From assembly GCA_002269645.1 (NCBI GenBank), contig NIVC01001371.1, positions 238,930 through 302,929 on the forward strand: a DNA stretch of 64,000 nucleotides, given 5' to 3'. Source of the stretch: Macrostomum lignano (Eukaryota). Shown piece after piece: positions 21,319-42,795 of the stretch. The first letter of the stretch is position 1. Each line of letters opens with the position of its first letter. Below the pieces are notes generated by a model. The model saw nothing but the letters and a program-made list of their open reading frames with translations. It had not been told where the DNA came from and ran no database searches. A program made the position numbers and the translations under genes.

Positions 21319-22488
21319 TCAATTCTCATTGTCGGCTGCATCGGGGGCTGCGCCGGACATCCGCCTGAGACTGTTAAAGATTGAGTGGAGCCAGAAGGAC
21401 TCTCGAACGATGGTGAAATCTGCGCTGCTTCGTCGCCTGGCGCTCTGGGTCAGGTTGGTCTGTGGGTGAGGAGAGTCGGGCAAACCTTAAGATATGAGCT
21501 TCCTGGCCAGCTTCATCTATGCTTATTTTTCTTCCTGCCAAACTTATCAATCGGTTCGAAATTCACCTTCTGAATTGGAGTCTTCATCTCGTAGTAGTCG
21601 TCGCCGAACTGCTTGAGCATAGTTCCAATCGATCTGTTATGGTTGAGCATCTCAAGCGTAGGCACGGATTGACTGCGCGGCCGGTGATGCTGATTCCACA
21701 GATTTTCAACCTGGACTGCCAGCGGTCGGTAGCCCCGTCTGATCGCTAGTGGTGGCCTCGACAGCTGCAGAGCCTGCCGCTGCTGCTGCTGCTGCTGTTG
21801 CTGCTGTTGCTGCTGCTGTTGCTGCTGCTGCTCCTCGTTTACTGCACATTTGAAAAAAGTGAGCACTTTTGAAGTTATGACAACACTTACAGTTCGTTTG
21901 ACAAAAGGGGTTGTAGCCTACTAGTTAGAGTGTCAGACTCAAGACTGAAAGGTTGGGGGTTCGATTCTCGACCTTACTCGGAACAATTTGTGTCCTTGAA
22001 CAAGACACTTAACTCTGCATTGCTTCAGCTCACCCAGCTGTAAAATGGGTGCCAGCATTAGCTGGGGTAATTGAGACTGTGTGTGTGGCGACCCCCCCCC
22101 CCCAGTCCTTGGACTGAACAGCCGTACGCAGCCTTCAGATGCGCCGCGCAATAGCTGCGGCTGAGCTGTCGGTTGCACTTCTGGCCCGATTGGGGCAGGA
22201 GTAGACATTCAATTATTACGAGCATTATTATTTTATTACTGACAAAAACTATGTAGCAAATTATGTTACCAGAGCACTGTGTATTGGATTATTCGGTGCA
22301 GCTATTTATATCTTCTAAACAGAATTTCTGTAGCTAAAATCACAGACCAGTAGTTAGGTCAAGCTTCAAAACTATACCTGGCATCGATAGAACTCACCTT
22401 TACTCCGAAGCGTCACCATGCTTTCCAAGTCTGACTCGACGTAAAACCTGGCCGCGTGGGTCTCTGGGTTCTCACTTTTGTCTGTCAT
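21319..22488 (-). CDS. Orphan protein with polyQ17 (168 aa); exons 22488-22398, 21841-21567, 21459-21319
   Basis: Canonical donors (G|gtgagt, AAG|gtgaat) and acceptors (tgtgcag, ctcacccacag) give an open 507-nt frame; mixed CAG/CAA tract. Confidence 0.6.
21907..22212 (+). mobile_element. CORE-SINE copy, full length
   Basis: Near-identical to 10663; in intron 1 of the polyQ gene. Confidence 0.9.
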
Positions 22489-23808: not shown

Positions 23809-25035
23809 TCAGGTGGTGGACAACACTGACATAGGTCGTCGGCTGGATCCTTCTGGAGCGTCCTGCTGAAGTGATGACAAGTCCACAATTCTATACGGGA
23901 TCTTCGCTAACTCCAGCATGGGATCCTTTGGATAGTGCGCAAACTGGGCCGGTGGCGGAATTGGCTGCTCGAAGCCCTCCAGCTTGGTGTAACCTTTCGT
24001 CATGGTTTCGCGCCACTTCCTCCAGGGAACGATGATGTCCTCCGGCTCCTTCTTCAGAATCAGAGGATTGGACTTGTCGGCCGGGTAGAATATCAATGAT
24101 TGGCAGGCGTTGCAGTTAGGCGGTACTAATGCCGATGTCGGTATATCGTCAATCGTTTCGAGCACCGACGGTCGCTCCTCCTGTTTGTCGTCGATGTGGA
24201 TGCAACGACTGCCCAGTGGTTGGCTGCAGTCGAACTTTAAATCGATGTTGTAGCGCCACTGCATAGAGCTGAGAACGTACACTTTGTCCAACTGTGGCCG
24301 GAACTGTGAGTAACGCGTATAGTAGCCGTCCTTGGGATTCTTGTCGCCGCGTTCGATGGCCAGCAGCCAGACCTTGAAGCTCTGACGCCTGGACACCTCG
24401 GTCAGCGGGAAAATTTGACCGCCAGATTCGACTCCCCAGTGCATTGTCGGGTAAAAGTAGTCGGAAAATTTCAGCTCCGTGAACTGACGCTTTGTCACCT
24501 GACCGGCTTTTATGTCGATCATTGACTGTCGATGCGAGTAGAACGGCCACTGAGATCCGTTGCTGTCATTAACCATCGTGTGCAGGCCGGATTTCAATGG
24601 TTGAAACTCCCAGCTGTAGTGACCACCCCTGTCGAATTTGTTCACCAAGGTGATATCGTCACACGCCTGCGCCAAGCCGATGGTCCAGTCGTGTCCTGCG
24701 ATTGCATTGTCGAATGAGATTCCAACGCGACATTTAAAGTGCTCGCCGCGCCACTGCATCAGATGTCGCTTCTCCGATATGCGCGTCAGCTCACCGTCCT
24801 GCGGTCCACAATAGTATGGCTTGACGTAATGGACATTGATGTGCTGGTCTGGCTGGAAGCGGGGCGTCAGACTGGTTGTCCCGGAGTTCGCGTGGCTCTC
24901 ACGCATTTGAAGCACGTCATCGTCTAATTCCTGGTTGTCTAGGACATCTTTGGTGATGCGGCAGTCCTCCTTGTCATCCCATTCCTCAGGAGGCACGTGT
25001 CCGTTGCGATTGTGCAGTTCATTCTCTCCCATCAT
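23809..25035 (-). CDS. FAM78: FAM78 family protein, intronless CDS
   Basis: WTIGLAQAC...SWEF...VNDSNGSQWPFY, SDYFYPTMHWGV, LTEVSRRQSFKVWLLA, PLGSR and IPTSALVPPNCNACQSL parallel the conserved FAM78A/B blocks as I recall them (WVVGWIQAC, SDSDGVNYPWY, NDNFYPSVTWAV, IPPSALVKPNANDAQ). Confidence 0.85.
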   Translation of the reverse strand: MMGENELHNRNGHVPPEEWDDKEDCRITKDVLDNQELDDDVLQMRESHANSGTTSLTPRFQPDQHINVHYVKPYYCGPQDGELTRISEKRHLMQWRGEHFKCRVGISFDNAIAGHDWTIGLAQACDDITLVNKFDRGGHYSWEFQPLKSGLHTMVNDSNGSQWPFYSHRQSMIDIKAGQVTKRQFTELKFSDYFYPTMHWGVESGGQIFPLTEVSRRQSFKVWLLAIERGDKNPKDGYYTRYSQFRPQLDKVYVLSSMQWRYNIDLKFDCSQPLGSRCIHIDDKQEERPSVLETIDDIPTSALVPPNCNACQSLIFYPADKSNPLILKKEPEDIIVPWRKWRETMTKGYTKLEGFEQPIPPPAQFAHYPKDPMLELAKIPYRIVDLSSLQQDAPEGSSRRPMSVLSTT

Positions 25036-25756
25036 CAATGGTTTGGAGCAACGTCAAGTTGGAATAAATTTTCCAGTGTATATATTAACACCACCTCAGA
25101 TTCAATACGGTATTCACCCCAAGAAGAAGATGATAAGATTTGGGAGCTCTATCAGTTTATTTACCTACCATAGACTATGCACTATGCGCTATATGCGCTG
25201 GGCACTGATAAATTTCAACTCAAATTTTCATTCATATAGCGGTTTCAACTTTGAACCAGATGTTTTTTTAGAATCATGCTGATGGTATGATAATGCATCG
25301 GTAATCAGCTTGAATTGTATAACTATTTCTCTTTTTACTAGTAGCTACGAGATACTCGTATATTTCATCTATGTGCAACCCGATGAAATTATACACAGCA
25401 AAATGCTCGTTATGGATTGTACACTTACATTACATTTATTGATCAGGGGGAGTAGAGTAAATGAAACACGGATATTGTGTTTCGGCTACAAATAGTTTCG
25501 CATGCAGTCAAAATAATTTTATAACGTATAAAGACGGTGATGCGCAAACGTGGCGCGCAAACTGGCCAAGTTTGCGATTTGTATATTTGAGCTGGTTCTA
25601 TTTCTATATCGAAGAAAATGCGACGACGTACATAAATTATGGACCGAGTGCAAACCAAAATGTGCATTTATGCTACATATAGGTGAATAAAACTCATTCA
25701 GAGAAAATAAATTATGTTATTGCAAGGCAACTCACCAACTTTACGCTATTATTAAT

Positions 25757-27062
25757 TGTGGGTTGGTCAAAATGTTCTGCAACCCACTCTTCTGTAGCCG
25801 TTTTGGCGTAACCAAATAATCTGAAATGCTTCACACCGAAGGCTTACTTTGCTGTTTACTTGTTTCGTGTAAGGAATTTCGTTCAAATTCATGAATTAGT
25901 TTCAGTTACGACTGGACTCCGACCATATCCTGCTTTCAACTTCTGCATGGAACCTTCAAAAGACAATATTCGCTTGTAATGTTTTTTTGTGCAGTAAATT
26001 TATATGCGCATGCAGCTGGATCGAAGATCTGTGGTTTACTGCAGCTGCACCCGCGTCTTTGGACACCGTTGCGCGCCAAATTTGCCAATTTTCTAACTCG
26101 ATTGTTTGAGCGTCCAAAACGAGAGCCGGTCTCGGTGACGGACATCCGTGACCGACGGGTCAGTGGCCCTCGCAGAAGCCACTGTGCGCAAGGATCGAAG
26201 CGTAAAGCAAAGATTCCTTGCATACGAGCTCGGTACGTGCGAGCTATGGTAGCGCTCACAACATCATGCAAGAGGATGCAGCTTAGCTGCACCAAGACCT
26301 GCACATGTTGGATGGCCGCGCATCTGCTCCCAGCGGAGCAGCGAGCTGAGCCTGTGCCGCGCATCTGCGACTGTGGCTGCAGATGTTCGAACCCCAACGG
26401 CCGCAGAAGGCTGTCTGACGTCGTGACAGGCGACGAATGTAGAACTTCTTCACGATGAAGTGTAAGCAGTCCAACATGGTCTGTCTGATCGAAGATGGGC
26501 CTATAAGGCCTGAGGTCGTGAAGAGCGGTTTCAGAAACAGGAAGAGGATGTTTACAATTTGATTCCCTCAACTCCTAAGTGTGGTGCATCACGGTGGACA
26601 TCCTTCAAGGGCAGCACTGTGACTACCAAGCATTAACCGAAATAATGCTATACATGTATGCTGCCGGTTGTGCTGCAAGAGCGGCGGGTGCTGCTGCACC
26701 ACGACAATTCGGCATTGCACACTGCTACTGCAACTCAGGCATTTCTGGAGCAGCAGGTGGTTCAGCTGCTGCCCCACTCACCTTACTCACCAGAACTCGC
26801 ACTCTGCGACTTCTGGATGCTTTCGAAGCTGCGGTCAGTAATTTCTGGGAGGCCATGACAGGGAGACACCTGGCTCGAACGGTCAAGCAGAACTTAAGAG
26901 GACGCCCACATCAAAAGTACCTCAGTTGCTTCCAGGCGGGATGGATACCAATGCAGCGATGCATGTATATAGAAACTGAGGAGAATTCGGAGGAATTTGT
27001 GCACCACTTTTTTCCTGGACATTTTAATAAAGCCAGTTGCAGAACTTTTTGATCTGCATTCC
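25757..27062 (+). mobile_element. Decayed full-length mariner (DD34D) element, ~1.3 kb
   Basis: TIR cores tcaaaatgttctgcaac (25767) and gttgcagaactttttga (27036). Frameshifted transposase with VTGDE, LLHHDNSALH and HSPYSPELALCDFW motifs. Confidence 0.85.
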
Positions 27063-28378
27063 TCCTACTCGTTAGCTTACTCCATTCGACTTATATGTAC
27101 CTGACTTAGCTGCAGGAGTCCGATGCGCTTGGAATCTCACCCGGCCACTGGTTGATCCTGGTTGATCCAATAGTAGTCGTGAAAAGAGATGCTGGGAGTT
27201 GGTTGGGGGCCAGCTACATGTACATGTATTACCCAACTACATGTAATTACGCGATAGACTGCCAAGAGATGACACACAACCCTATTTGACATTTTCATTT
27301 TAGAGACACCTTATTATTATAACGCACAGGTATGCATTTCGGGATAAGAATTAATACCTAGGGAGAACTAGGGATCTCAACGATATTTAAGTTGTCCTTT
27401 TTAGTGCCCGGATGTGCTGCCGTCAGTTCAACAAACCGCATGTCCTAGGGGTGCTTTGAACACTTTTGGGAACGATCGTATACCCCTTTGGGTGGACTTG
27501 TGTGTCAGCGTGGGAAAAGGTTCTCCAGAACACCTGCACCAAAAAGATGACATAAGTTATTAAAAATTCGAGTGAAAATATATTTATTATGAAACAATTA
27601 ATAAAATTTCACTCGAAAAATTGAAAAACTATTCATATAGCCTGTCTATAGAGTTATAAATCTTTATAGTTCCGGTTTTAATGCAAAAACGATTTGAGAT
27701 CAACTCGTTTAATTTTGGTTGGACAGGTTTTATAAAATTTCTGCGCGGCCGCCGCGGCCTGTACGAGTGACAATAGACGAATGAAGGAATTACAACTTCC
27801 ACGAAAAGTAAAATGGATATTCGAAAAAAATATTGTTAGTCGCTATAATTAGATACTGTCCGCCGTCACTTAGGCCCCTATGTTTTAATAAAGTATTAGA
27901 CCATGGCTGGCTATAGTATAAGGTAAAGCTCACGTCTGTCGTCTAGGCTACCAGTCTAACAGTCTTGGAGTTAGCCCCTAGTTGTGCCCATAGCTAGTAG
28001 GCCCAGAGCCTAGTTATCTTATCAGTATCTTGGTTTGAAGATAAGATTTTAATCTGCATGTTCTTTATATAAACATTGAATCATATAGATAAGATAGGGA
28101 CCATTCTTATTAATTACATAAGAGGCGGCATAGGCCCTAGAAATAGTAAAAGAGATCAAACTTTTGATACATGAGTTTTATTATTAGAGGTCATGCTAAT
28201 AAAATGCTTCGAATTATATTTGTTTATTGATTTAGATTGTATTAGGCCAAGGCTTATAAGTATATATAGGCAGGCCTAGGCCTAACTTATGTCGTTATGA
28301 TATAAGCTAAGTTTTATATCAAATAAAAAATATAGATCAAAATCTAGTCTAGTGTAAGCCTAGGGCTGTTCCATAGTC

Positions 28379-28748
28379 CAGATCATGCTGGGTGCATGCC
28401 CATTCTCTAAAATATGCTGATATTGCGACAATAAATGACCTTTTTTATATTGCATAATAGAACCAACCTTATTAGCAGATAATTTGGTTGATTTTTGTGC
28501 TTTTTTTCCGCAATACTATTTATAACATAAAATTGATACATGCAAAGATTTGTTTAAATGCTTTTTACAAGCTTAAAAACTATAAAGCTAGAAATTTAGG
28601 CCTATGCTTAAAATTAACTTTTTTCTTTTTTTCTACTTCATAATAACTCTTACGCATGATTCTATAAAGTGCATACTAGGTGTGTATGCATACTTTTTTC
28701 TTAGGAATGATGCATGCCCAAATTTTTGGGTGTATACTACATGATCCA
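28379..28748. mobile_element. MITE-like element with CAGATCATG...CATGATC termini (copy 1)
   Basis: Its ends match the ends of 29466-29915 in inverted orientation. Confidence 0.6.
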
Positions 28749-29171
28749 GGGTGTTGGGACTGCTTAGCTAAAGTAAGATAAAAAGGTAGATGTAGGTGGT
28801 AGGCCTATATAGACCCTATCTATTACTATTTAGTATTGCCCCATCTTGATTGAGTTGCTTTATCACCTTAATTTGTGCACTAATCAAAGTCGTTTGCTAT
28901 CTAATAATGTCAATTATAATTTCAAGAAAATTAATATAGGCTCTAGAACTTTTATATAGTGTTTAAATATTCTTATATAAATTTTATTGCTGAAGTTAAA
29001 AGACTTGATACCTATTTTAGATTTATTAGCAATTTCTCTTATAATAGAATAGACTAGAGTAACCAAATTTCTATTTTAGTTTTGTATACATTATATATAT
29101 ATAATATATTATAAAAGGTTTAAGATTGATTTTACTAAATTTGATTATTAACAAAATTATATAAGTACTAC

Positions 29172-29447
29172 CATACATGCGCAACCCCCCTGATTTACAC
29201 TGGCCATGCGACTTACTTTTTGACCAAAAATGCGACTTACCTGTGAAAGAAACCCTAAAGCAAAATAAACGCTTATTTGAATAAACGGCAGGAGTAACTA
29301 TGACTGTCTTATCAGGCCTAAATGCCTCGGCATCTAATTAGTACTACGTCCGTATTCTTTGGGGTGGCATTTTTGCGACTTACCCCTGGTCCACCACAAT
29401 TTACGGTGGCCAGATCGGCCAGGTCAGCCAGCAGTTGCGCATGTATG
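29172..29447. mobile_element. Young hAT-type MITE
   Basis: 14-bp TIR catacatgcgcaac; perfect 8-bp TSD agtactac (29164-29171 / 29448-29455). Confidence 0.85.
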
Positions 29448-29465
29448 AGTACTACTACATTACTT

Positions 29466-29915
29466 TAGATCATAGTATATGCCCAAAAATTTAGGTGTAC
29501 ATTGGTCTTAGACATCAAAAGTTTAGAGTGCATATCTGGCATGCACTCAATGCAATCATGTGAAAAAAGTTTATATTAAGTGAAAAATTTCATAAATTCA
29601 TTTTAAGCATAATTTTAAGCTTTTTGGTTATTTAAACTTATAATAGTGCATTTTAAAAATGTTTTGGCTTATTGATTTTTTACTATAAATGCTATAGCTA
29701 TGAAAGATAAATTATAAACTATAAAAAATTATTAAATATTTAAATTTTAATATATATATTTGTTTTCTTTACATTTAAATTCAACTTTGAATTTTAAAAT
29801 ATTGCAAAGGATCTTTTTCAATTTTAGATGGCATATGCTTAAAACTTTTTTTGATATGCATCACATTTATTTGTAATTTGTAATTTTTGTTTTGGCATAC
29901 ACCTAGCATGATCTG
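29466..29915. mobile_element. MITE-like element with CAGATCATG termini (copy 2, inverted)
   Basis: ggcatacacctagcatgatc is the reverse complement of the copy 1 start, apart from two transitions. Confidence 0.6.
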
Positions 29916-30115
29916 AATTATAGTATTAGTAGTATAGCTAAGTATCTAGCTAAGATTAATATTTTAGTCATTATCTAAAGCTTATATTACCTAGTTTTAT
30001 CTGGAATATAGCTATTTTGTTTATTGTCAGTTTGTAATGTTTGTTTGCTAGTAGATAACTGACAGTTCAATAATAGTGGTGCTTATATTAATAATACCAC
30101 TGGTAGCATTAACTA

Positions 30116-30502
30116 TAGAGGTCGGACGGGATCCCAATCCCGATCCCGAAATCTCGGGATCCCAAGGAAAATTGAATTCCCACGGGACCAGAATCCTGAC
30201 CCTAAAAAACTCAAGATTCAGGAACAGGTCTTTCGATTAATAATTTATAGAGTTAGTGATTACTTGAAGGTATTTTGCTTTAACTTGTACTCGTTATATT
30301 ATTAACTTTGTTGGTTACAAAACTTCATATCAATTTCGTTGTGTTTTACTTCTTGATCTTGACAATCTTTTCTCAATTTTGTTTAACTTTACATGGACAA
30401 TACACTAAAAGACCTGATCCCGATTCCCGAATCCCGATCCCGAGAAAAAAATTATTCCCGATCCCGATCCCGCCCAAAGATTTCAATCCCGTCTGACCTC
30501 TA
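30116..30502. mobile_element. hAT MITE with subterminal ATCCCG repeats
   Basis: TIR tagaggtcggacgggat / atcccgtctgacctcta; perfect 8-bp TSD attaacta. Confidence 0.9.
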
Positions 30503-31014
30503 ATTAACTACTTAATTTGGGAAATTTGCAATAGGCTTTATCCTATTCATTATGAATTTTATAAATAAACTAAATATATATCAAAGTAAATACATAGTAT
30601 ACTAAAACAAAAGTTCTTTTTGTTTTAGTAAATCTTGTGATTAAAAAAATTTTTTTTATATTGTATTGACTATTTGTAGGTTTCTAAAGTATAATCAAGA
30701 CTATAGACTTTATTCATATGGTAGTAAAACTATTATATAAGAAGCTTGTAGCCTAAAGAAAGGTATTATTATTGCATTTAACTATCAAAGTACTTTTCAT
30801 AGTCTATAGTCTTTAAAGTTTATTTTATTTGCACTAGCAAGAAAAAATGGCCTGAGCTCCAACCACAGTATATTTAAGGTACTTTAAAAAAGTAGTTTTA
30901 ACCTTTTTGCAAATATTTAAATAGGTTTCATTTCTCAAGGCCAAATCCTATAAAAACATTTTAGCTGGAGCCTATTAATTTCCCAGTGAATTGGTGCAAA
31001 ACAATACTCATTAG

Positions 31015-31394
31015 TAGAGGTAGGAAAATATCACATTTTTTAGATTTTTGAGACTTAAGATCTATGCTTTTGAGATAATCAAGATTCAATAGAGATTTGA
31101 CATTAAGCCTTATTAGCATCTAGTAAGCCTATTTACACTATTTTATCTATTAGTGCTAATAATGTTATTTGTTGTGTACAATGATAATAATAGAAAGAAA
31201 AACAATTATTATTTAATATTAAGCTTGTTAGTAACTTGATGTATATCCAATATAAATATGATAGTATCATAGTTACCAATTATCACATAGTCATAAATCT
31301 TGACTTTTTTATATCTCAAAAACAAGATCAAGATTCAGAAAAGTGCCAAGATCTTGATGATCAAAATAGAGATTGAGATCTTGTCTAATTGCTA
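31015..31394. mobile_element. Heavily mutated hAT MITE
   Basis: Starts tagaggtagg, ends ...gcta; perfect 8-bp TSD ctcattag; agatc-type subterminal repeats. Confidence 0.6.
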
Positions 31395-31899
31395 CTCATT
31401 AGATAGATCAGATTCTTTTCTTTAAAATGACATCTTATTCGTACAAATTGCTCTTTTAGTTTTGTAGTTATAACATTATTTGTTTAGGCTGGCTTTTTTC
31501 CTAATGCTTGGCAATGAAACTAGATATTTTGATTAAGTTTAGAGCTAATATATCTTGATAAAACAATTATACTAAAAGCATACTTTATGAAAAAAAACTT
31601 AAAGACTTTGAAATACCTTAATAAAAGCAAAATAATTTTAAAAAATTAAATATATTTAATTTTATTCTATTTGATATCTGGTAATAAGTTTATTATTTAT
31701 AGTATAGGTTTTGTAATTTTCTTACCTTAACTAAATTGTTTTTCCCTTTTTGATCTAATTCCCTATTAGAATATTTAACTAAAGGTTAGACAAAAAGAAA
31801 TCATATAATAATTTTTAAGTCAAGATTTATCAAGACAAATGTTTGCATAAAAAATAGAACTTTATAATTATAATATTATAAACATTAATCTTATCTATC

Positions 31900-32175
31900 T
31901 ACTAGTCAGATGTGCAATCAGCAGTTTAGCCATAGCTAATGCATAATATATCTAAAGGCTGCATATGGCTGTTCAGTCCAAGGACGGGGAGGGGGGGTTG
32001 CCACACACTATCAATTACCCCAGCTAATGCTGGAATCCATTTTATAGCTAGGTAAACTGAAGCAATGCAGAGCTAGGTGTTTTGCTCAAGGACACAAATT
32101 GTTCCAGTGGGATCAGAAATCGAACCCTAACCTTCAAGTTGTGAGTCCAATGCTCTAACCAATAGGCTACAATCT
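31900..32175 (-). mobile_element. CORE-SINE copy, strongly C>T/G>A mutated
   Basis: Aligns over its length to the other copies; differences are mostly transitions toward A/T. Confidence 0.9.
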
Positions 32176-33230
32176 ATTTATTTACATTTTAATAACTAAA
32201 AAAATCGCAGCTATGACTACAGAAATCTTTGAGAAAAGCCATAGCCATAACAACAGTTGTTTTCCACAGGCATATTCATAGCTCCTAGTTGCCATAGTCA
32301 TAATTTTAGTGAAATTTAAATTTTATATTTCTATGAGTACAATATTCAATCTATGTACTTGAGAATTTATATTTTGTCTGTAGGTATTTCCTAAGTATTC
32401 TGTTCATATTCTAAACTTCCTACCTTGCTGCTGATTTATTATTTAAGCTATATTTTTAACCTCACTGCTATGCCAATTATGGATTGGTTTAATCCTGTCT
32501 CTTTGTCAACCATTCTCATATGTTTGTTTCTAACACCTGCTACCTTTAATCGTCACTAATTTTGTTGACAACAGTCTTCTCTTTGTAGTCTTCTTTGCGA
32601 GCAATCTTTGCAGATTTTACTGCAACTGACTTCCATAGTTTTTCCATCATTTTCACTTCTCTGCTCCCTTTGTGAACTGCATATCTGGCGATTGCTTCTA
32701 ATCTACCTGTTTTTATTGCCGCGAATACACGCTCGTAGTTCACAGTATCTCCCCCACTATTTATGAATTGCAGCTGTGCATTGCGACCGGGCTCCCCCGC
32801 CGTCCCCCCTGCTCTGTAGCCAGCCAACCTCCGCCAGCTAGTCAGCCTATCACCGCTTAAGAGTCCCCCCAAGGATTCCCCTCAACCCCCTGGGCAATAG
32901 CGAACAACCTCTGGTAATCGAGAGAAGAGTTCAAAGCAGGAGAGACACCGTTGAGTCAAAATACTTTTGAGCAGCATTTTATGGAAGCTGTCAAGTTCGG
33001 TGAGGCTTTTTTATATTTCAATTGTCAATTCCTCTGCGTTAAAAATGTATAAATATTCGCTAGAGGGCTGTGGGCACCCCGGCGCGACATCATTCCACAA
33101 CTCAGCGCTGAGGCCATGCTGCCCATTCCGCCAACTCCCTGAGCATGAGCACATTCAAGCACGCCGATGCTTTACGCAGTACACACGCTTACACAGCGAC
33201 CCTTACTTACTTTTCTAATCTTGAGATGTA

Positions 33231-33458: not shown

Positions 33459-33559
33459 TACATGTCGGGGGCGCTGTACACCCTGTGTGCATGCTCAGTG
33501 ATCAGCGTGCTGAAAGGGCCTGACATGACTGCTTGTTCTTTAATTAATAATTCAAAAAT

Positions 33560-33840
33560 TGATTACACCTGCCCCGATTGGGCCAGATGTGCAACTAACA
33601 ACTCAAACGCGGCTAGTACCGCGGCTGTTCATTCCAAAGACTTTAAGGTCACCACACCACCACACACCTCAATTACCCCAGCTAATGCTGGCGCCCATTT
33701 TACAGCTGGGTGAACTGAAGCAATGCAGAGTTGAATGTCTTGCTCAAGGACACAAATTGTTTCAGTGGGAATCGGGAATCGAACCCTCGACGTTCAAGTC
33801 GTGAGTCCGACGCTCTAACCACTAGGCCACCACAACCCCC
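33560..33840 (-). mobile_element. CORE-SINE copy (variant middle)
   Basis: Same head, CORE block and 3' hairpin as the family. Confidence 0.9.
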
Positions 33841-34365
33841 TACTAGGCCACAACCCTCCTACTATACCACAGCCCTCCTACTAGGCCACAACCCTCCTAC
33901 TATACCACAGCCCTCCTACTAGGCCACAACCCCCTACTAGGCCACAAACCCCTACTAGGCCACAACCCCCTACTAGGCCACAACCCCCTACTAGGCCACA
34001 ACCCTCCTACTATACCACAGCCCTCCTACTAGGCCACAACCCCCTACTAGGCCACAAACCCCTACTAGGCCACAACCCCCTACTAGGCCACAACCCCCTA
34101 CTAGGCCACAAACCCCTACTAGGCCACAACCCCCTTACTAGGCCACAACCCCCTACTAGGCCACAACCCCCTACTAGGCCACAACCCCCTTACTAGACCA
34201 CAGCCCTCCTACTAGGCCACAACCCTCCTACTATACCACAGCCCTCCTACTAGGCCACAACCCTCCTACTATACCACAGCCCTCCTACTAGGCCACAAAC
34301 CCCTACTAGGCCACAACCCCCTTACTAGGCCACAACCCCCTACTAGGCCACAACTCCCTACTACT
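33826..34365. repeat. Minisatellite, 18-19-bp unit ctactaggccacaacccc, continuous with the SINE 5' end
   Basis: Roughly 25-30 units, ending about 90 bp before the hnRNP K ATG. Confidence 0.95.
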
Positions 34366-34456: not shown

Positions 34457-37400
34457 ATGGATCACACAAATGAGCCACCAAGCAAACGACAATACGCCGG
34501 AAGCGGAGCGCGCAACGAAATGCGCTTTTTAATCCCGTCTAAGGTAAATCACGTGATCAATACGCACTGATCTATTAGTGTAGAATAATTCATGTGCTCA
34601 CTGTCTCATTCTGATTGCAGATGGCTGGCGTTATCATTGGCAAAGGCGGAGCCAACATCAAGCGTTTACGCGAAGAGGTGAGCACATCGAATACTTTGCC
34701 ATGTATATATTTTTAAATTAATGTTTAGTCAGCAGTTTGCTATTAATATCACGCTTGTTTTATTTTCTATACTTAATAATACTATAGTACCATTATTGTT
34801 TTACTAATTTCGTATTGAAAAGTCTACAAATATGCTAGTCGTACATTGTGCACGAATTCATTTTATAATACTGACAGTAATAGAACTATATTATTAACAG
34901 CTAGATCAAATATCCAAAGTTACCAGTCGAAAACTTACAAAATCCAAAAAGTACGTAGAGAACCCGCTGTACAGATCCCACCCCCACTCTACTCTCTTTT
35001 CCCTTTCCAGTTCTCTGCCAAAGTGTCCGTACCCGATTCCAATGGCCCCGAACGGTACTGATGAAGTCGCTGATAATTTCCCTGTTATTGTTGCGTAATA
35101 TTTGTATGTTTTTCAAACTGACGCGTTCCTGAAAATTTGCTTTTTTAATCTTCCTGATAAGGCTGTTTATTTTCAATCCACATCATTCGTACTTTTTAAT
35201 TGTCTTTTCAATAAAACCATTACTAATCCACAGTGCTTCGGATCTAGATTGGCATTTGACTGTCAGTGTCTCGGATCTAGATTGGCATTTGACTGTCAGT
35301 GTCTCGGATGTAGATTGGCATTTGACTGTCAGTGTCTCGGATCTAGATTGGCATTTGACTGTCAGTGTCTCGGATGTAGATTGGCATTTGACTGTCAGTG
35401 TCTCGGATCTAGATTGGCATTTGACTGTCAGTGTCTCGGATCTAGATTGGCATTTGACTGTCAGTGTCTCGGATCTAGATTGGCATTTGACTGTCAGTGT
35501 CTTGGATGTAGATTGGCATTTGACTGTCAGTGTCTCGGATGTAGATTGGCATTTGACTGTCAGTGTCTCGGATGTAGATTGGTATTTGACTGTCAGTGTC
35601 TCGGATGTAGATTGGCATTTGACTGTCAGTGTCTTGGATGTAGATTGGCATTTGAGTGTCAGTGTCTCGGATCTAGATTGGCATTTGACTGTCAGTGTCT
35701 CTGATTTAGATTGCCATTTGACTGTCAGTGTCTTGGATCTAGATTGGCATTTGACTGTCTGTGTCTCTGATGTAGATTGGCATTTGACTGTCAGTGTCTC
35801 GGATGTAGATTGGCATTTGACTGTCAGTGTCTCGGATGTAGATTGGCATTTGACTGTCAGTGTCTCGGATCTAGATTGGCATTTGACTGTCTGTGTCTCT
35901 GATGTAGATTGGCATTTGACTGTCAGTGTCTCGGATGTAGATTGGCATTTGACTGTCAGTGTCTCGGATGTAGATTGGTATTTGACTGTCAGTGTCTCGG
36001 ATGTAGATTGGCATTTGACTGTCAGTGTCTCGGATGTAGATTGGCATTTGACTGTCAGTGTCTCGGATGTAGATTGGCATTTGACTGTCAGTGTCTCGGA
36101 TGTAGATTGCCATTTGACTGTCAGTGTCTCTGATGTAGATTGGCATTTGACTGTCAGTGTCTCGGATCTAGATTGGCATTTGACTGTCAGTGTCTCGGAT
36201 CTAGATTGGCATTTGACTGTCAGTGTATCTTTAAGAGGAACCTAACATTTAGTATGTAGTAAATAAAAAGCTGCTTGTATGTTACTGTATTGTTGTTAGG
36301 CATGCTTTAAATAACCATTGACACATCTCATTACTAACAGTAATTTAAATGAAATGACAGGTTTCTGATTAGAGTAGAGATTTTGAAACCGCATAAGAAT
36401 TTATGTTGCGTTATTGGTTGAGAGAAAGTTTCTGATGAAATCTTAATGGTCAGTTTTTCATCGGTTTGATTTGTTAATATCTGTTCTTGCTATTCTATTA
36501 ACAGTTGAATTGCAAGGTTCCTCCAACACTCGGAACCTTCGCATTGGCACTAGTTTTTCTGTCAAACAGATGACTTATTTTATTAGAGGATAAAAAGCAT
36601 TCTTACGTCACGTTTCTTATTTCACGTCACGTCATTCTTACCTGCTGCATTTCTAAGCAGCATATGATGCTAGTATGGGTAGAAATACTACTATTTGAGA
36701 TGGTAAATAAGCGATGTTCTACTAGAATTACAGTCGTGTCTGACTCAAGTTAGTTTGTGAACTGATTTGAATAGACTAAATGAGATTATTATCTCTATGT
36801 TCTTCATCCCCCAAGAGTTTAAATATTCCCCAGATTTCACTTTTGCCTATTTTTGTGCAAGATATTTCAGTCTCCAAATTCCACAACCCCAAGTTTCACA
36901 GTCCCAAATTTCACAACTTTAAATGATATTTCTAATTGGGGTTGCAAAAGTTTTGGGGTTTGGGGCAAAGCTAGTTTGAGAATTAAAAAAATTAGGAGTC
37001 TACAAAAGCATCGTCTTATCATACTACTTGTTCAACGACTCGTACTACTTACACTCTGTATAATTTTTTGGAAGTCCAGAAGGTCAAAAAGTTGTCAATG
37101 AAGCGCTAAAACAAACAAATAATTCTGTTCCTCTGATGTATCTTCTGCTTTCGAGTATCTAAGTGCCCGTTTTTTATTATTTAAAAACCCGCCATCCAAC
37201 CGCGCAGAGTTCTGTGCTTGGAGGGCGAGCAGCCGATGCTGGAGTCCCTGCTAGCCGACGTGCTCAACACTATGGTTGTCGAGGGCAACAGCGGCCGCGG
37301 CGACCGGGACGGCCTGGGCACCCAGCAGGGCGCGGTGACCAACACCGGGGATGTGGACCTGCGCCTGCTGGTGCACCAGTCACAGGCCGGCTGCATCATC

Positions 37401-39656
37401 GGCAAAGGCGGCAGCAAGATCAAGGAGCTGCGCGAGGAGTCCAAGCTGCGCGCCTTAAAAGTGTATTCGGTTGCTTGTCCAGTGTCCACCGATCGCGTCA
37501 TTCAGATGATCGGCGCCCCGGCCGAGCTTCTTGGCGCCGTCCGCATGGTGTCCGAGCTGCTGGAATCGGCGCCGCCTAAAGGCCAAATTGCCGGCTACGA
37601 TGCGCGCAATTTCGACGAATTCGGCGCCGAACAGTACGGCGGCTGGCCCGGCTCCGGCCGCTGGGGCGTCGGCCGGCAAGACCACTCCGTGGCCGCCAGC
37701 GCCGTCGGCATGCCCCTGGCCCGCCCGGCTATCCGCCTGGCGGCGCTTTGGCCGCCGCGGCCGCCGCTGCTCACATGCGCGGAGGCGTGGCTCCGCCGCC
37801 GCCGCAGGCTCGCGGACTCGGCCCGCCAGTTGGTGTACCCATGGCCGCTGGCGGCGCCGCCGGCGGGATGCCGTACGGTGCTCCGCGCGCTCCACGCGTG
37901 CCAGCCGGTCCGGAGGTGACCCAGCAGGTGTCAATCCCGGACTCACTGACCGGCTCCATCATGGGCCGGGGCGGCCAGCGCATTAAGCAGATCAGGATGG
38001 AATCTGGCGCCGATATTAAAATTGATCGGGGCGACCCCGGTCAGGATCGCATTATTACTATTAGGGGCACCCAGGAGCAGATACAGAATGCGCAGTACCT
38101 GCTGCAGATGTGGTGAGTATAGTTTGTATATTTGTTTATGTTACACTCGCGATTCCTTCCCAGGTTTTGATCTGCCAGTTGGCCCTCAGTGTGGAAGACC
38201 AGTGATTGTTGCCCAGACATTTTTTTATAACATTATACTTCACAAAGTTTGACACTTTTGGACAACTCTCTCGGTCTTCCGTATTGATTGCCTTCGTTCG
38301 ACATTTTACTCATATTGACTTGTGTGCGCGAGCTCAGTGTCTTTTTATGTGATTCCTCCACCCCACATCTGGGTCATTGTGCATGTGTAGACCGCTCTAC
38401 CCCCACACCTAGTCCATCTCAAGACTGCTCTATCCCACACCTTAGTCCATCTGAAGACCGCTCTATCCCACACCCTAGTCCATCTGTAGACCGCTACCCT
38501 AGTCCATCTGAAGACCGCTACCCTAGTCCATCTGAAGACTGCTCTATCCCACACCCTAGTCCATCTGAAGACCGCTTTATCCCACACCCAGTCCATCTGA
38601 AGACCGCTCTATCCCACACCCTAGTCCATCTGTAGACCGCTCTATCCCACACCATAGTCCATCTGAAGACCGCTCTATCCCACACCCTAGTCCATCTGTA
38701 GACCGCTCTATCCCACACCCAGTCCATCTGAAGACCGCTCTATCCCACACCCTAGTCCATCTGTAGACCGCTCTATCCCACACCCAGTCCATCTGAAGAC
38801 CGCTCTATCCCACACCCTAGTCCATCTGTAGACCGCTCTATCCCACACCATAGTCCATCTGAAGACCGCTCTATCCCACACCCTAGTCCATCTGTAGACC
38901 GCTCTATCCCACACCCAGTCCATCTGAAGACCGCTCTATCCCACACCCTAGTCCATCTGTAGACCGCTCTATCCCACACCATAGTCCATCTGAAGACCGC
39001 TCTATCCCACACCCTAGTCCATCTGTAGACCGCTCTATCCCACACCATAGTCCATCTGAAGACCGCTCTATCCCACACCCTAGTCCATCTGTAGACCGCT
39101 CTATCCCACACCCAGTCCATCTGAAGACCGCTCTATCCCACACCATAGTCCATCTGAAGACCGCTCTATCCCACACCCAGTCCATCTGAAGACCGCTATA
39201 TCCCACACCCTAGTCCATCTGTAGACCGCTCTATCCCACACCCTAGTCCATCTGAAAACCACTCTATCCCACACCCTAGTCCATCTGAAGACTGCTCTAT
39301 CCCACACCCTAGTCCATCTGAAGACTGCTCTATCCCACACCCTAGTCCATCTGAAGACCGCTCTATCCCACACCCAGTCCATCTGAAGACCGCTCTATCC
39401 CACACCCTAGTCCATCTGAAGACCGCTCTATCCCACACCCTAGTCCATCTGAAGACTGCTCTATCCCACACCCTAGTCCATCTGAAGACCGCTCTATCCC
39501 ACACCTTAGTCCATCTGAAGACCGCTCTACCCCACACCCTAGTCCATCTGAAGACTGCTCTATCCCACAGCTTGTTATTTTAGTCAAGCAAATAACCTGA
39601 ACAAAGTTCCCCCTCGTTAACATTTCAGCGTGAAGAAGTACTCAGGACAGTACTAA
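34457..39656 (+). CDS. HNRNPK: Heterogeneous nuclear ribonucleoprotein K (3 KH domains); exons 34457-34543, 34621-34677, 35011-35054, 37208-38112, 39629-39656; one base missing in exon 4
   Basis: KH1 MRFLIPSK|[19 protein letters not shown]2 [27 protein letters not shown]3 VTQQVSIP...[21 protein letters not shown], and C-terminus [13 protein letters not shown] typical of hnRNP K. Exon 4 is 905 nt where its phases require 906. Confidence 0.93.
35236..36230. repeat. Intronic minisatellite, 33-bp unit gattggcatttgactgtcagtgtctcggat(c/g)ta
   Basis: About 30 copies in hnRNP K intron 3. Confidence 0.95.
38375..39570. repeat. Intronic minisatellite, 33/31-bp unit cccacaccctagtccatctg(a/t)agaccgctctat
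   Basis: About 36 copies in hnRNP K intron 4. Confidence 0.95.
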
Positions 39657-40189: not shown

Positions 40190-40740
40190 TACCTTCATCA
40201 GGATAGTGGCGCCTGTAGGTGGCCTTCATCAGGATAGTGGCGCCTGTAGGTGGCCTTTATTAGGATAGTGGCGCCTGTAGGTGGCCTTTATTAGGATAGT
40301 GGCGCCTGTAGGTGGCCTTCATCAGGATAGTGGCGCCTGTAGGTGGCCTTCATCAGGATAGTGGCGCCTGTAGGTGGCCTTCATCAGGATAGTGGCGCCT
40401 GTAGGTGGCCTTTATTAAGATAGTGGCGCCTGTAGGTGGCCTTTATTAGGATAGTGGCGCCTGTAGGTGGCCTTCATCAGGATAGTGGCGCCTGTAGGTG
40501 GCCTTTATCAGGATAGTGGCGCCTGTAGGTGGCCTTCATCAGGATAGTGGTGCCTGTAGATTGCCTTTATCAGTATAGTGGCGCCTGTAGATTGCCTTTA
40601 TCAGTATAGTGGCGTCTCTAGATGACATCTATCAGGATAGTGGCGCTTGTAAGTGACATCTTTCAGGATAGCGGCGCTTGTAAGTGACATCTATCAGGAT
40701 AGTGGCACCTGTAAGTGACGTTTATCAGGATAGTGGGCAG
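40190..40740. repeat. Minisatellite, 31-bp unit atcaggatagtggcgcctgtaggtggccttc
   Basis: About 17 copies, diverging toward the right. Confidence 0.95.
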
Positions 40741-41269: not shown

Positions 41270-41925
41270 CTCATCAGGCCACTCCCCCCGCTAGCAGTTA
41301 GTGACTGCAATATCATCAGGCCACTTCCCCCGCTAGCAGTTAGTGACTGCAATATCGTCAGGGCCACTCCCCCCCGCTAGCAGTTAGTGACTGCAATATC
41401 GTCAGGGCCACTCCCCCCCGCTAGCAGTTAGTAACTGCAATATCGTCAGGGCCACTCCCCCCCGCTAGCAGTTAGTGACTGCAATATCATCAGGCCACTC
41501 CCCCCGCTAGCAGTTAGTAACTGCAATATCGTCAGGGCCACTCCCCCCCGCTAGCAGTTAGTGACTGCAATATCATCAGGCCACTCCCCCCCGCTAGCAG
41601 TTAGTAACTGCAATATCGTCAGGGCCACTCCCCTCCGCTAGCAGTTAGTGACTGCAATATCATCAGGCCACTCCCTCCGCTAGCAGTTAGTGACTACAAT
41701 ATCGTCAGGGCCACTCCCCCCCGCTAGCAGTTAGTAACTGCAATATCGTCAGGGCCACTCCCCCCCGCTAGCAGTTAGTGACTGCAATATCGTCAGGGCC
41801 ACTCCCCCCCGCTAGCAGTTAGTAACTGCAATATCGTCAGGGCCACTCCCCTCCGCTAGCAGTTAGTGACTGCAATATCATCAGGGTCACTCCTTCCGCT
41901 AGCAGTTAGTGACTGCAATATCATG
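41270..41925. repeat. Minisatellite, 42-44-bp unit atcgtcagggccactccccccgctagcagttagtgactgcaat
   Basis: About 15 copies starting ~50 bp after the APC13 stop; the C run length varies. Confidence 0.95.
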
Positions 41926-42389
41926 AGGGTATGGTGCGAATACACGAATTCTCTGGCCCTGACGCAAACAGTTAAGACCCCAAAACCGAAAGCAATCAAA
42001 GTACGTATTTGATTCCTTGAATTCATTCGTTTTTCTGTATTTTCGTGCTTGTCGCTTATGATGAAATGCTGCCAAATTTAATTACCAAATACAAAATATT
42101 ACTTCTTATGACTTCATAATTTGTAAGTAGACGAGAAGTGGCCGGTTGTAGATTGTTGATGCCGAAGGCTAATAGTTGCCGCGCTGTCGGATAAGTGGCC
42201 GAAATTTGGAAATTGGCCACTTGTCCGAACGCCTGCACGCGTTGGCGTGCAGACGGAAACAACTTGGTATTGTTTGCATTAGGCTGCTTGGGTCGGCTCG
42301 GCAGTCAGTTGTCGTAGACACGGAGAGACCCGATTGGAGGGCCAACAGATTGACTCGTGTTCTAAAATGAATTAAAATGCTTCGATTCC

Positions 42390-42795
42390 CATTGGATTCA
42401 GTATCCTCACCCAAGTCTCACCCACTAGATTCGGTATCCTTACCCAAGTCTCACCCATTGTATTCAGTATCCTTACCCAAGTCTCACCCACTAGATTCGG
42501 TATCCTTACCCAAGTCTCACAAATTGGATTCAGTATCCTTACCCAAATCTTACCCACTAGATTCAGTATCCTTACCCAAATCTTACCCACTAGATTCAGT
42601 ATCCTTACCCAAGTCTCACCCACTAGATTCAGTATCCTTACCCAAATCTTACCTACTAGATTCAGTATCCTTACCCAAGTCTCACCCACTAGATTCAGTA
42701 TCCTTACCCAAATCTCACCCACTAGATTCAGTATCCTTACCCAAGTCTCACCCACTAGATTCAGTATCCTTACCCAAATTTCATCCATTTGATTT
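42390..42795. repeat. Minisatellite, 33-bp unit ttcagtatccttacccaagtctcacccactaga
   Basis: About 12 copies. Confidence 0.95.

What the first reader, a model, noticed from the sequence alone, without database searches (positions are those of the whole stretch)
27920..32540. Hypermutated domain 2: 4.6 kb of strand-symmetric C>T/G>A erosion between divergent FAM78 and hnRNP K
Seen: CpG nearly absent except in young insertions; strong TA, tag and cta excess. It begins just after a CpG-rich patch (gcgcggccgccgcggcc near 27745) and a donor-like aag|gtaaag at ~27922, and ends abruptly near 32540. Inference: same architecture as domain 1, a protected promoter followed by an eroded first intron or outron. 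If general, this is a promoter-proximal RIP-like or non-CG-methylation mutagenesis system that I do not know to be described in animals.
Basis: partly seen in the sequence, partly recalled or inferred. Interest (0 to 1): 0.8.

Follow-up and report, generated by a model that had tools for sequence, protein, structure and literature searches.

The report
Old AT-rich CpG-poor flank of hnRNP K
This 4.7 kb AT-rich, CpG-poor stretch upstream of the flatworm Macrostomum lignano's hnRNP K gene is real, but it looks like old unconstrained DNA worn down by the genome's ordinary C-to-T mutation bias plus local CpG decay, not a RIP-like hypermutation system.

Summary
The window is Macrostomum lignano contig NIVC01001371.1. 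From about 27,940 to 32,700, GC is 0.25-0.31 against about 0.47 around it. CpG o/e is 0.18 once two young MITEs are removed, TpA o/e is about 1.05, TAG/CTA are in excess, and there is no strand skew.

Direction can be polarised with an old SINE copy inside the domain. It has 40 GC>AT against 10 AT>GC changes, with C>T equal to G>A. SINE copies and tandem arrays outside the domain show the same AT bias. They predict an equilibrium GC of 0.19-0.34, which is the domain's own GC. So no special mutator is needed for the base composition.

The RIP substrate index is unchanged (1.22). There are no strand-coherent runs, and no reproducible non-CG context appears.

What is domain-specific is CpG hypermutability: odds ratio 7-9 inside against about 1.4 outside, in two data sets. 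This points to local germline CpG methylation; M. lignano keeps DNMT1 and DNMT3.

Four of 12 gene 5' flanks sampled (Sec24, NF-YB, hnRNP K and one other) carry such a domain, each running up to the first coding exon.

A GGCCTA/TAGGCCTA excess is unexplained.

Verdict: ordinary decay plus a probable methylation footprint, of modest interest.

The parts
27940..32700 (.). AT-rich, CpG-depleted domain ('domain 2'). It is non-coding, old and present in all three paralogous contigs.
   Evidence: GC 0.25-0.31. CpG o/e is 0.18 in old sequence and GpC o/e 1.94. No ORF exceeds 62 aa. It has the highest paralog divergence in the aligned 21 kb.
27600..27930 (.). AT-rich but CpG-replete patch at the left edge. 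It contains GCGCGGCCGCCGCGGCC (27,744-27,760) and the donor-like AAG|GTAAAG (about 27,920). It is either a candidate unmethylated promoter or simply younger DNA.
   Evidence: 16 CpGs in 300 bp against 9.2 expected. Paralog divergence is about 4.4%, so it is not visibly constrained.
28510..29698 (.). Old foldback-like element. The inverted arms 28,510-28,746 and 29,468-29,698 are 68% alike.
29164..29447 (.). Young CpG-rich MITE with perfect 14-nt TIRs CATACATGCGCAAC (29,172-29,185 and 29,434-29,447).
   Evidence: Absent from both paralogous contigs. TIRs found. It holds 12 of the domain's 42 CpGs.
30108..30502 (.). Young CpG-rich MITE with (GATCCC/GGGATC)-rich inverted ends.
   Evidence: Absent from both paralogous contigs. 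It holds 17 of the domain's 42 CpGs. Sequence.
31849..32190 (-). Old copy of a tRNA-derived SINE, shared by all three paralogs. It serves as the internal 'clock' that polarises the erosion.
   Evidence: 77% identical to the consensus. S>W 40, W>S 10. CpG sites hit 14/24 against non-CpG 20/121.
28277..28284 (.). TAGGCCTA palindrome. Further sites are at 28,597-28,604 and 28,800-28,807. The same motif occurs in domain 1 at 6,315, 7,810, 7,816 and 9,295.
   Evidence: All 7 window matches lie in the two AT-rich domains. Expectation is 0.16 from within-domain dinucleotide shuffles.
32700..32980 (+). GC- and CpG-replete stretch just upstream of the hnRNP K start codon. It is a putative core promoter, 5' UTR or trans-splice acceptor region; a candidate acceptor TTGCAG lies at 32,771-32,776.
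   Evidence: The acceptor motif [T/C]TNCAG comes from PMC8629364. Paralog divergence here is only about 0.8%. Whether it functions this way is inferred, not shown.
32981..32999 (+). First coding exon of hnRNP K (ATG GAA GCT GTC AAG TTC G), followed by the donor G|GTGAGG.
   Evidence: The gene model starts at this position in all three contigs. Sequence. KH exons at 37,218-38,116.
26570..27010 (+). Decayed mariner-type transposase remnant (HDN...PYSP(E/D)LA.CDFW...). It is GC-rich and retains its CpGs, although it lies only 1 kb from the domain.
   Evidence: Translation. CpG o/e 0.84. Identification rests on the motif as I know it; there was no database hit.
23809..25038 (-).
   Evidence: A 408-aa product is on record in three M. 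lignano contigs. No Pfam hit.

Best explanation
Domain 2 is the oldest unconstrained non-coding DNA in the 8 kb gap between the divergent FAM78-like and hnRNP K genes of Macrostomum lignano. It runs up to the promoter and first-exon region of hnRNP K.

Its composition comes from two ordinary processes.
1. The genome-wide, strand-symmetric, AT-biased point-mutation spectrum, dominated by C>T/G>A. This drives any DNA not refreshed by repeat insertions, and not held by selection or biased conversion, toward about 20-30% GC.
2. A CpG-specific decay confined to this domain. The most likely cause is that its CpGs are, or were, methylated by DNMT1/DNMT3 in the germline, while the flanking repeats and exons are not.

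The surrounding GC-rich sequence is exons, tandem arrays and younger transposon copies that still carry their original composition.

Shown: the direction and symmetry of the changes; the same bias outside the domain; the domain-restricted CpG effect; and the youth of the CpG-rich inserts.

Inferred: methylation as the cause of CpG loss, and that the domain is a transcribed outron or 5' intron or upstream spacer of a broadly expressed gene.
For: 1. Direction. The SINE copy in the domain differs from the family consensus by S>W 40 against W>S 10 (u=0.276, v=0.064, predicted GC*=0.19). C>T is 18 and G>A is 18.

2. The same bias outside.
- Three young SINE copies in GC-rich surroundings: S>W 27, W>S 6, GC*=0.20.
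- Seven outside copies pooled: 73 against 35, GC*=0.34. The S>W:W>S ratio does not differ from the domain copy (p=0.13).
- Rare variants in 15 tandem arrays: 36 against 12, GC*=0.22.
- The domain's GC (0.26-0.30) equals these equilibria. The genome is 45.9% GC and its CDS 58.7% (PMC6739440).

3. The CpG effect is restricted to the domain.
- SINE: 14/24 CpG sites against 20/121 non-CpG sites hit inside (OR 7.1, p=5e-5). Outside: 10/142 against 39/763 (OR 1.4, n.s.). Heterogeneity p=0.009.
- Paralog differences: 6/12 against 95/919 inside (OR 8.7, p=8e-4). Outside: 29/1421 against 88/5539 (OR 1.3). Heterogeneity p=0.002.
- DNMT1 and DNMT3 are retained, and low-level 5mC is reported in M. lignano (PMC11292947, PMC9246332, PMC10658182).

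4. Age and neutrality.
- The domain and its SINE are shared by three contigs that are 4-8% diverged here.
- There are no ORFs and no Rfam or tRNA hits.
- The CpG-rich inserts are lineage-specific.

5. Only a modest recent rate excess. Paralog divergence is 5.2% in the domain against 3.3% in the adjacent intergenic DNA, and A<>T transversions are raised to a similar degree.
Against: 1. Methylation was not measured. The published M. lignano bisulfite study could not be read here.

2. If the promoters of Sec24, NF-YB and hnRNP K lie inside such domains, methylation of active promoters would be unusual for an invertebrate.

3. 'Old versus young' is inferred from one SINE copy. The mariner remnant 1 kb away is GC-rich and CpG-replete, but its age could not be measured.

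4. S<>W differences between paralogs are about 2x more numerous in the domain than a uniform regime predicts relative to the left flank (141 against 66, expected ratio about 1.07). Some regional rate or fixation difference therefore exists.

5. C's after G are 2-3x less variable than other C's inside the domain (5.4% against 11.9%, p=0.005). GGCCTA/TAGGCCTA is far above dinucleotide expectation. Simple drift does not predict either.

6. The sample is small: eight SINE copies, two deep paralog lineages (so paralog differences cannot be polarised) and 12 gene flanks.
Confidence: 0.6

Rival explanations
1. Fixation-bias contrast. The domain simply shows the raw mutation bias because it is a recombination and conversion cold spot. 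The surrounding genes and repeats are kept GC- and CpG-rich by GC-biased gene conversion, and by selection on codon usage in exons. No methylation difference is needed, because gBGC also opposes CpG>TpG fixation outside the domain.
For: - CDS is 58.7% GC against a genome average of 45.9%.
- The three contigs show a mosaic of converted tracts; L002 switches partner at about 30.75-31.5 kb. Conversion is therefore active at this locus.
- Two mid-aged SINE copies in GC-rich surroundings have u about equal to v (GC* 0.37-0.38).
- S<>W differences are 2x over-represented in the domain relative to the left flank.
Against: - The young SINE copies and the tandem-array variants outside the domain already show a 3-4:1 AT bias. 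Any gBGC outside is therefore weak.
- An OR of about 1.3-1.4 for CpG outside against 7-9 inside is a CpG-specific contrast. A general S>W fixation bias does not predict that.
Confidence: 0.15
2. Targeted cytosine deamination or mutagenesis of promoter-proximal DNA: RIP-like, AID/APOBEC-like, or driven by non-CG methylation.
For: - 34 of the 59 scored differences in the domain's SINE copy are C>T/G>A. The share of S>W transitions among all changes is higher than in outside copies (OR 2.9-3.5, p=0.005-0.0002).
- TpA/ApT is 1.05.
- TpC is the most-hit 5' context in the SINE (9/24).
- GpC cytosines are spared.
- Domains recur next to 5' ends.
Against: - The S>W:W>S ratio is the same outside the domain.
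- Once CpG sites are removed, the transition excess is not significant (20:6 against 39:24).
- The RIP substrate index is 1.22 against 1.27-1.31 outside, and the composite index is negative.
- Seven other SINE copies are not hypermutated, and unique DNA is affected. The process is therefore not repeat-triggered.
- C>T and G>A alternate: 26 runs against 19 expected.
- The 3' context ranks CpA about equal to CpC and above CpT in the SINE, but CpA equal to CpT and above CpC in the paralog data. The TpC preference is absent in the paralog data.
- The recent rate excess is at most about 2-fold.
Confidence: 0.07
3. A functional AT-rich regulatory or outron region, whose composition and GGCCTA/TAGGCCTA motifs are maintained by selection. 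Examples would be nucleosome exclusion or binding sites for a housekeeping-promoter factor.
For: - TAGGCCTA occurs 7 times in the window and once in L005. Every occurrence lies in an AT-rich domain next to a 5' end. Expectation is 0.16.
- The same architecture recurs at Sec24/NF-YB, hnRNP K and an L005 gene.
- NF-YB's exon is in frame with the ATG that the M. lignano spliced leader donates (PMC8629364). These are therefore outron-type upstream regions.
Against: - The domain is the fastest-diverging part of the locus between paralogs.
- One of the three TAGGCCTA sites is not exactly matched in contig L003.
- The palindrome is fully explained by an independent one-sided GGCC+TA preference (15/27 and 11/27 give 6.1 expected, 7 observed). 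It shows no dimer-site signature.
- The domain tolerates SINE and MITE insertions.
Confidence: 0.1

Closest known systems
CpG depletion of germline-methylated domains in 'mosaic' invertebrate genomes (for example Ciona, oyster, annelids; reviewed in PMC9246332 and PMC11292947)
   Same: Kilobase-scale domains with CpG o/e well below 1 lie next to domains with CpG o/e about 1. CpG>TpG/CpA transitions are specifically elevated. DNMT1 and DNMT3 are present in the species.
   Different: In those animals the depleted domains are the bodies, exons included, of broadly expressed genes. Here the depleted zone lies upstream of the first coding exon, and the hnRNP K and NF-YB exons keep CpG o/e about 0.9-1.1. 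The domain is also far more AT-rich than methylation alone would make it. Methylation at this locus has not been measured.
Decay of neutral DNA to the AT-rich mutational equilibrium (universal GC>AT mutation bias; the Fryxell-Zuckerkandl idea that AT-rich DNA deaminates faster)
   Same: S>W exceeds W>S 2-4 fold both inside and outside the domain. The domain's GC equals the predicted equilibrium. Surviving G/C are clustered (GpC, GGCC), as expected if stacked G/C neighbours protect cytosine. The last point rests on established knowledge plus inference.
   Different: The scale is very fine: sharp edges within 100-300 bp, in a genome averaging 46% GC. The edges coincide with repeat insertions and exons rather than with isochore-like gradients.
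Fungal repeat-induced point mutation (RIP)
   Same: AT-rich tracts rich in TpA, made by C>T/G>A transitions on both strands. TpA/ApT exceeds 0.89.
   Different: There is no CpA/TpG depletion, no dependence on duplication and no strand-coherent runs. Transversions and AT>GC changes are present in normal proportion. RIP is known only in fungi (PMC12543289, listed).

Membership tests
RIP (repeat-induced point mutation) | Depletion of the CpA/TpG substrate: (CpA+TpG)/(ApC+GpT) <= about 1.03 and a positive composite index | tested here: not met
   The index is 1.22 (1.24 for the old core), against 1.27-1.31 elsewhere. The composite index is -0.17.
RIP (repeat-induced point mutation) | Acts on duplicated sequence, so that the copies of a repeat family are mutated | tested here: not met
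   Only the copy inside the domain is heavily changed (u=0.28). Seven other copies have u=0.03-0.15. The rest of the domain has no similarity to anything else in about 107 kb sampled.
RIP (repeat-induced point mutation) | Almost exclusively C>T/G>A changes, in strand-coherent stretches | tested here: not met
   34 of 59 scored differences are C>T/G>A. The remaining 25 are other classes. There are 26 runs against 19 expected for the C>T/G>A order.
Methylation-driven CpG decay (mosaic invertebrate methylome footprint) | CpG o/e far below 1 inside the domain and near 1 in the flanks | tested here: met
   0.18 in old domain sequence, against 0.84-1.09 in 25-27.9 kb and 1.11 in the hnRNP K exons.
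Methylation-driven CpG decay (mosaic invertebrate methylome footprint) | CpG transitions elevated over other C>T changes, specifically in the domain | tested here: met
   OR 7.1 and 8.7 inside, against 1.4 and 1.3 outside. Heterogeneity p=0.009 and 0.002.
Methylation-driven CpG decay (mosaic invertebrate methylome footprint) | DNMT1/DNMT3 present, and 5mC actually on these CpGs in the germline | not testable with these tools
   The presence of DNMT1/3 and low 5mC in M. lignano comes only from the literature. No methylation data are available here.
Methylation-driven CpG decay (mosaic invertebrate methylome footprint) | The domain coincides with the transcribed body of a broadly expressed gene | tested here: inconclusive
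   The domain lies upstream of the first annotated coding exon (32,981). Whether it is a transcribed outron or 5' intron is unknown. The downstream exons are not CpG-depleted.
Neutral decay to AT-rich mutational equilibrium | The same S>W bias outside the domain, and domain GC equal to the predicted equilibrium | tested here: met
   GC* is 0.19 inside. Outside it is 0.20 (young SINEs), 0.34 (all SINEs) and 0.22 (tandem arrays). Domain GC is 0.26-0.30.
Neutral decay to AT-rich mutational equilibrium | No sign of constraint | tested here: met
   No ORF exceeds 62 aa. No RNA family or tRNA was found. Paralog divergence is 4.4-10% per 500 bp, the highest in the aligned region.
AID/APOBEC-type editing | A fixed 5' context (TpC, CpC or WRC) and strand-coordinated clusters | tested here: not met
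   The TpC excess appears in the SINE only (9/24). It is absent in the paralog data (T 10.5%, A 11.7%, C 14.5%). There is no clustering by strand.
Non-CG (CHG/CHH) methylation mutagenesis | A reproducible 3' context preference among non-CpG C>T changes | tested here: not met
   SINE: CpA 27%, CpC 25%, CpT 7.5%. Paralogs: CpA 11.2%, CpC 5.6%, CpT 11.2%.

The most novel reading that the evidence does not exclude
In M. lignano the sparse 5mC is aimed at multi-kilobase outron or upstream domains of trans-spliced housekeeping genes (Sec24, NF-YB, hnRNP K), rather than at gene bodies as in other invertebrates. These domains start at an unmethylated CpG-replete promoter patch. They suffer CpG loss, an about 2-fold raised non-CpG C>T rate that spares GpC, and accumulation of GGCCTA. 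This would be a promoter-proximal methylation and erosion domain of a kind not described in animals.
Probability: 0.2. Interest if true: 0.6.

Novelty: new member of a known kind. Interest (0 to 1): 0.3.

Why it matters
If the ordinary reading is right, the result is mainly a caution. In a repeat-rich, GC-rich genome such as M. lignano's, the few stretches of old unique DNA look 'hypermutated' only because everything around them is young or selected.

The part worth following up is the domain-restricted CpG hypermutability. The genomic pattern of DNA methylation is said to be unknown for any free-living flatworm (PMC9246332). These sequence footprints predict where it lies: in AT-rich zones just upstream of the first coding exon of conserved, probably trans-spliced genes. 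Existing bisulfite or nanopore data can test this directly. Such data would also tell whether outrons are treated as 'gene body' by the methylation machinery.

Tried and rejected
1. Polarising paralog differences. The three contigs contain only two deep lineages, with L002 a recombinant. The 'GC>AT = AT>GC' result and the GC* values are therefore artefacts of majority polarisation and were not used.

2. First SINE tally. It included misaligned 3' ends of the L004 and L005 copies. It was redone with pairwise alignments. The earlier impression that L004 and L005 copies show 3x CpG hypermutability disappeared.

3. Sampling more M. lignano loci.
- A protein search with the mariner remnant found nothing.
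- The KH3 search returned only hnRNP K orthologues of other animals.
- Three guesses at the annotated NF-YB product were not on record.
- Generality therefore rests on about 107 kb (the window, L004 and L005).

4. Domain as a dispersed repeat or satellite. There is no similarity to the rest of the window, L004 or L005, apart from the SINE.

5. Hidden gene or RNA in the domain. There are none. The minus-strand ORF 32,546-32,872 at the right edge has no Pfam or PDB relative and is probably a chance ORF.

6. TAGGCCTA as a described motif. The literature search gave only irrelevant primer hits.

7. Wasik et al. 2015, the M. lignano bisulfite data, is not held in the library.

8. Transcription-associated strand asymmetry. 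No skew and no skew reversal was found across the domain.

Full report
**Source and locus.** The ORF at 23,809-25,038 (-) is 100% identical to a protein carried by three contigs of assembly GCA_002269645.1, Macrostomum lignano Mlig_3_7. Window 13,809-35,035 is the exact reverse complement of NIVC01001371.1:252,738-273,964. Two other contigs, L002 (NIVC01001503.1) and L003 (NIVC01002907.1), carry paralogous or homeologous copies of the locus.
- The KH exons at 37,218-38,116 match hnRNP K KH3 structures at E=1e-23.
- The annotated gene starts at ATG 32,981, followed by the donor G|GTGAGG.
- 'FAM78' could not be verified: there is no Pfam hit, and the only relatives found are unnamed M. lignano proteins.
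- No gene is called between 25,038 and 32,981.

- GC is 0.25-0.31 across 28-32 kb, against 0.51-0.53 on either side.
- For 27,920-32,540, CpG o/e is 0.41, TpA o/e 1.03 and GpC o/e 1.55. Without the young inserts these become GC 0.26, CpG 0.18 and GpC 1.94. Elsewhere CpG o/e is 0.73-0.87 and TpA o/e 0.82-0.85.
- TAG and CTA are at 1.44x and 1.35x expectation.
- Skews are near zero.
- 29 of the 42 CpGs sit in two MITEs, 29,164-29,447 and 30,108-30,502. Both are missing from both paralogous contigs, so they are recent insertions.
- The left CpG edge is sharp at about 27,940. The right edge is a ramp ending near 32,700.

**Direction of change.** A tRNA-derived SINE has eight copies in the 107 kb available. 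The copy at 31,849-32,190 lies inside the domain and is shared by all three contigs.
- Against the family consensus it shows S>W 40 (34 transitions) and W>S 10, giving u=0.276, v=0.064 and an equilibrium GC of 0.19.
- C>T is 18 and G>A is 18. They alternate rather than cluster: 26 runs against 19 expected.
- The erosion is therefore real, strand-symmetric and gradual.

**Is the process peculiar to the domain?** Mostly not.
- Three young SINE copies in GC-rich surroundings show S>W 27 against W>S 6, GC*=0.20.
- All seven outside copies pooled show 73 against 35, GC*=0.34. This ratio does not differ significantly from the domain copy (p=0.13).
- Rare variants in 15 tandem arrays show 36 against 12, GC*=0.22.
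- The domain's GC of 0.26-0.30 is thus what any M. lignano DNA should reach if left alone. The genome average of 45.9% and CDS of 58.7% (PMC6739440) reflect exons and abundant young repeats. Most GC-rich sequence in the window is tandem arrays, SINEs, a mariner remnant and exons.
- Between the two deep paralog lineages the domain differs by 5.2%, against 3.3% for the adjacent intergenic DNA. A<>T transversions are raised to a similar degree. S<>W differences are about 2x more numerous than a uniform regime predicts. That is a modest excess, not hypermutation.
- Paralog differences cannot be polarised, because only two deep lineages exist.

**What is peculiar to the domain: CpG.**
- In the domain's SINE, 14 of 24 CpG positions are hit against 20 of 121 other G/C positions (OR 7.1, p=5e-5). 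In outside copies the figures are 10/142 against 39/763 (OR 1.4, n.s.). Heterogeneity p=0.009.
- Among paralog differences, 6 of 12 CpG sites vary in the domain against 95 of 919 other C sites (OR 8.7). Outside it is 29/1421 against 88/5539 (OR 1.3). Heterogeneity p=0.002.
- M. lignano retains DNMT1 and DNMT3 and has low-level 5mC, whose genomic pattern is unknown (PMC11292947, PMC9246332, PMC10658182).
- Local germline CpG methylation is the simplest cause. It is inferred, not measured.

- The RIP substrate index is 1.22, against 1.27-1.31 outside, and the composite index is negative.
- Other SINE copies are not mutated, and unique DNA is affected.
- Changes are not strand-coherent.
- Non-CpG context is inconsistent between data sets. 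In the SINE, CpA is 27%, CpC 25% and CpT 7.5%. In the paralogs, CpA is 11.2%, CpC 5.6% and CpT 11.2%. The TpC excess appears only in the SINE.
- RIP-like, APOBEC-like and non-CG-methylation readings therefore fail their defining tests.

**Architecture and generality (small sample).**
- Domain 1 (6,144-9,737) has the same composition. It fills the whole gap between the Sec24-like start codon (6,143, minus strand) and an NF-YB exon.
- That NF-YB exon begins at TTTCAG|GACTCAG. Its frame continues from the ATG that ends the M. lignano spliced leader (SL sequence and acceptor motif from PMC8629364).
- In L005, a CpG-free AT-rich zone (about 200-1,600) abuts a TTTCAG acceptor 40 nt before a start codon.
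- Of 12 gene 5' flanks, four (Sec24, NF-YB, hnRNP K and the L005 591-aa gene) have GC 0.25-0.33 and CpG o/e 0-0.5. The other eight have GC 0.41-0.54 and CpG o/e mostly 0.7-1.1; the exception, the L005 FAM78-like gene's flank, has CpG o/e 0.40-0.48.
- In each case the CpG-free zone runs 1.4-4.8 kb upstream from the first coding exon. It ends at AT-rich but CpG-replete DNA: 27,600-27,930, 7,300-7,500 and L005 1,800-2,900.
- This fits 'unmethylated promoter, then methylated outron or intron'. It fits equally well 'older DNA bounded by younger insertions'. No TSS could be tested.

**Residual oddities.**
- Inside the domain, cytosines after G vary half as often as others (5.4% against 11.9%, p=0.005; SINE 4/37 against 22/91). 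This matches the GpC excess.
- GGCC is 27 observed against 11 expected, AGGCCT 11 against 1.7, and TAGGCCTA 7 against 0.16, under within-domain dinucleotide shuffles.
- All window TAGGCCTA sites, and the one in L005, lie in AT-rich domains.
- The palindrome is explained by an independent one-sided GGCC+TA preference: 6.1 expected, 7 observed.
- One possibility is that this is the most mutation-resistant G/C cluster. Another is that it is a motif with a function. This is open.

**Verdict.** The best account is old neutral DNA at the genome's AT-rich mutational equilibrium, with an added CpG decay confined to the domain that probably marks germline methylation. Interest is modest. The testable lead is the predicted location of flatworm 5mC.

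Noticed in passing
window 52,601-64,000: A 32-bp satellite (consensus CATAAAGACACGAAACCAGACATCAGGCATAT), about 359 copies, 96% matches, with strong A>T skew (AT skew +0.59). It runs to the end of the window.
   Followed up: partly
window 709-1,500; 1,871-2,209; 2,661-3,379; 5,031-5,627; 12,022-12,271; 12,925-13,148; 18,082-18,319; 33,830-34,363; 35,231-36,226; 38,382-39,569; 40,192-40,736; 41,277-41,929; 42,388-42,777; 48,476-48,979; 49,341-49,886: An unusually dense set of minisatellite arrays with periods of 18-65 bp. Several lie inside introns of hnRNP K, and one (5,031-5,627) lies inside the Pro-rich coding exon of the Sec24-like gene.
   Followed up: partly
window 10,660-10,986(-), 13,822-14,091(+), 21,895-22,228(-), 31,849-32,172(+ as aligned), 33,539-33,833(+), 43,630-43,784(+); L004 16,316-16,574; L005 13,785-14,047: A tRNA-derived SINE family of about 330 bp, at roughly one copy per 13-15 kb. 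Copies range from 77% to 95% identity to the consensus.
   Followed up: yes
window 9,713-9,760: The NF-YB histone-fold exon starts at TTTCAG|GACTCAG. It has no in-frame genomic ATG downstream of the acceptor before the conserved domain. The frame continues from the ATG that ends the M. lignano spliced leader, so the start codon is probably SL-donated.
   Followed up: partly
window 8,051-8,761: A MITE or foldback element with 137-nt terminal inverted repeats (96% complementary) inserted in domain 1. It keeps its CpGs, unlike the surrounding DNA.
   Followed up: no
window 5,900-6,143: The 5' end of the Sec24-like coding exon has no CpG at all in about 250 bp at GC 0.42-0.44 (about 8 expected). 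The CpG-free zone of domain 1 therefore extends into coding sequence.
   Followed up: no
window 13,809-35,035 against L002 and L003: The three paralogous contigs are a mosaic. L003 is the outlier over most of 25.7-32 kb, but the window copy is the outlier at 30.75-31.5 kb, where L002 and L003 are 99.8% alike. Coding regions are 0-0.2% diverged. This suggests ongoing gene conversion or recombination between the copies.
   Followed up: partly
window 26,570-27,010: A mariner-type transposase C-terminal remnant with stops. It is GC-rich and CpG-replete, only 1 kb from the eroded domain. Its age could not be determined.
   Followed up: partly
window 32,546-32,872 (-): A 108-aa ORF ending exactly at the right edge of the AT-rich sequence, antisense to the hnRNP K promoter region. 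It has no Pfam or PDB relatives and is probably a chance ORF.
   Followed up: partly
window 29,623-29,838: A 216-bp, very AT-rich segment (down to 9% GC) present only in the window copy and absent from both paralogs. It is either an insertion here or a shared deletion there.
   Followed up: no
window 3,980-4,096; 11,428-11,576; 45,997-46,706: A second short interspersed repeat family, with the core CCGGATYGCTATTGTGAAGTTTCAAAGGACCCGAGGG, present in both orientations.
   Followed up: no
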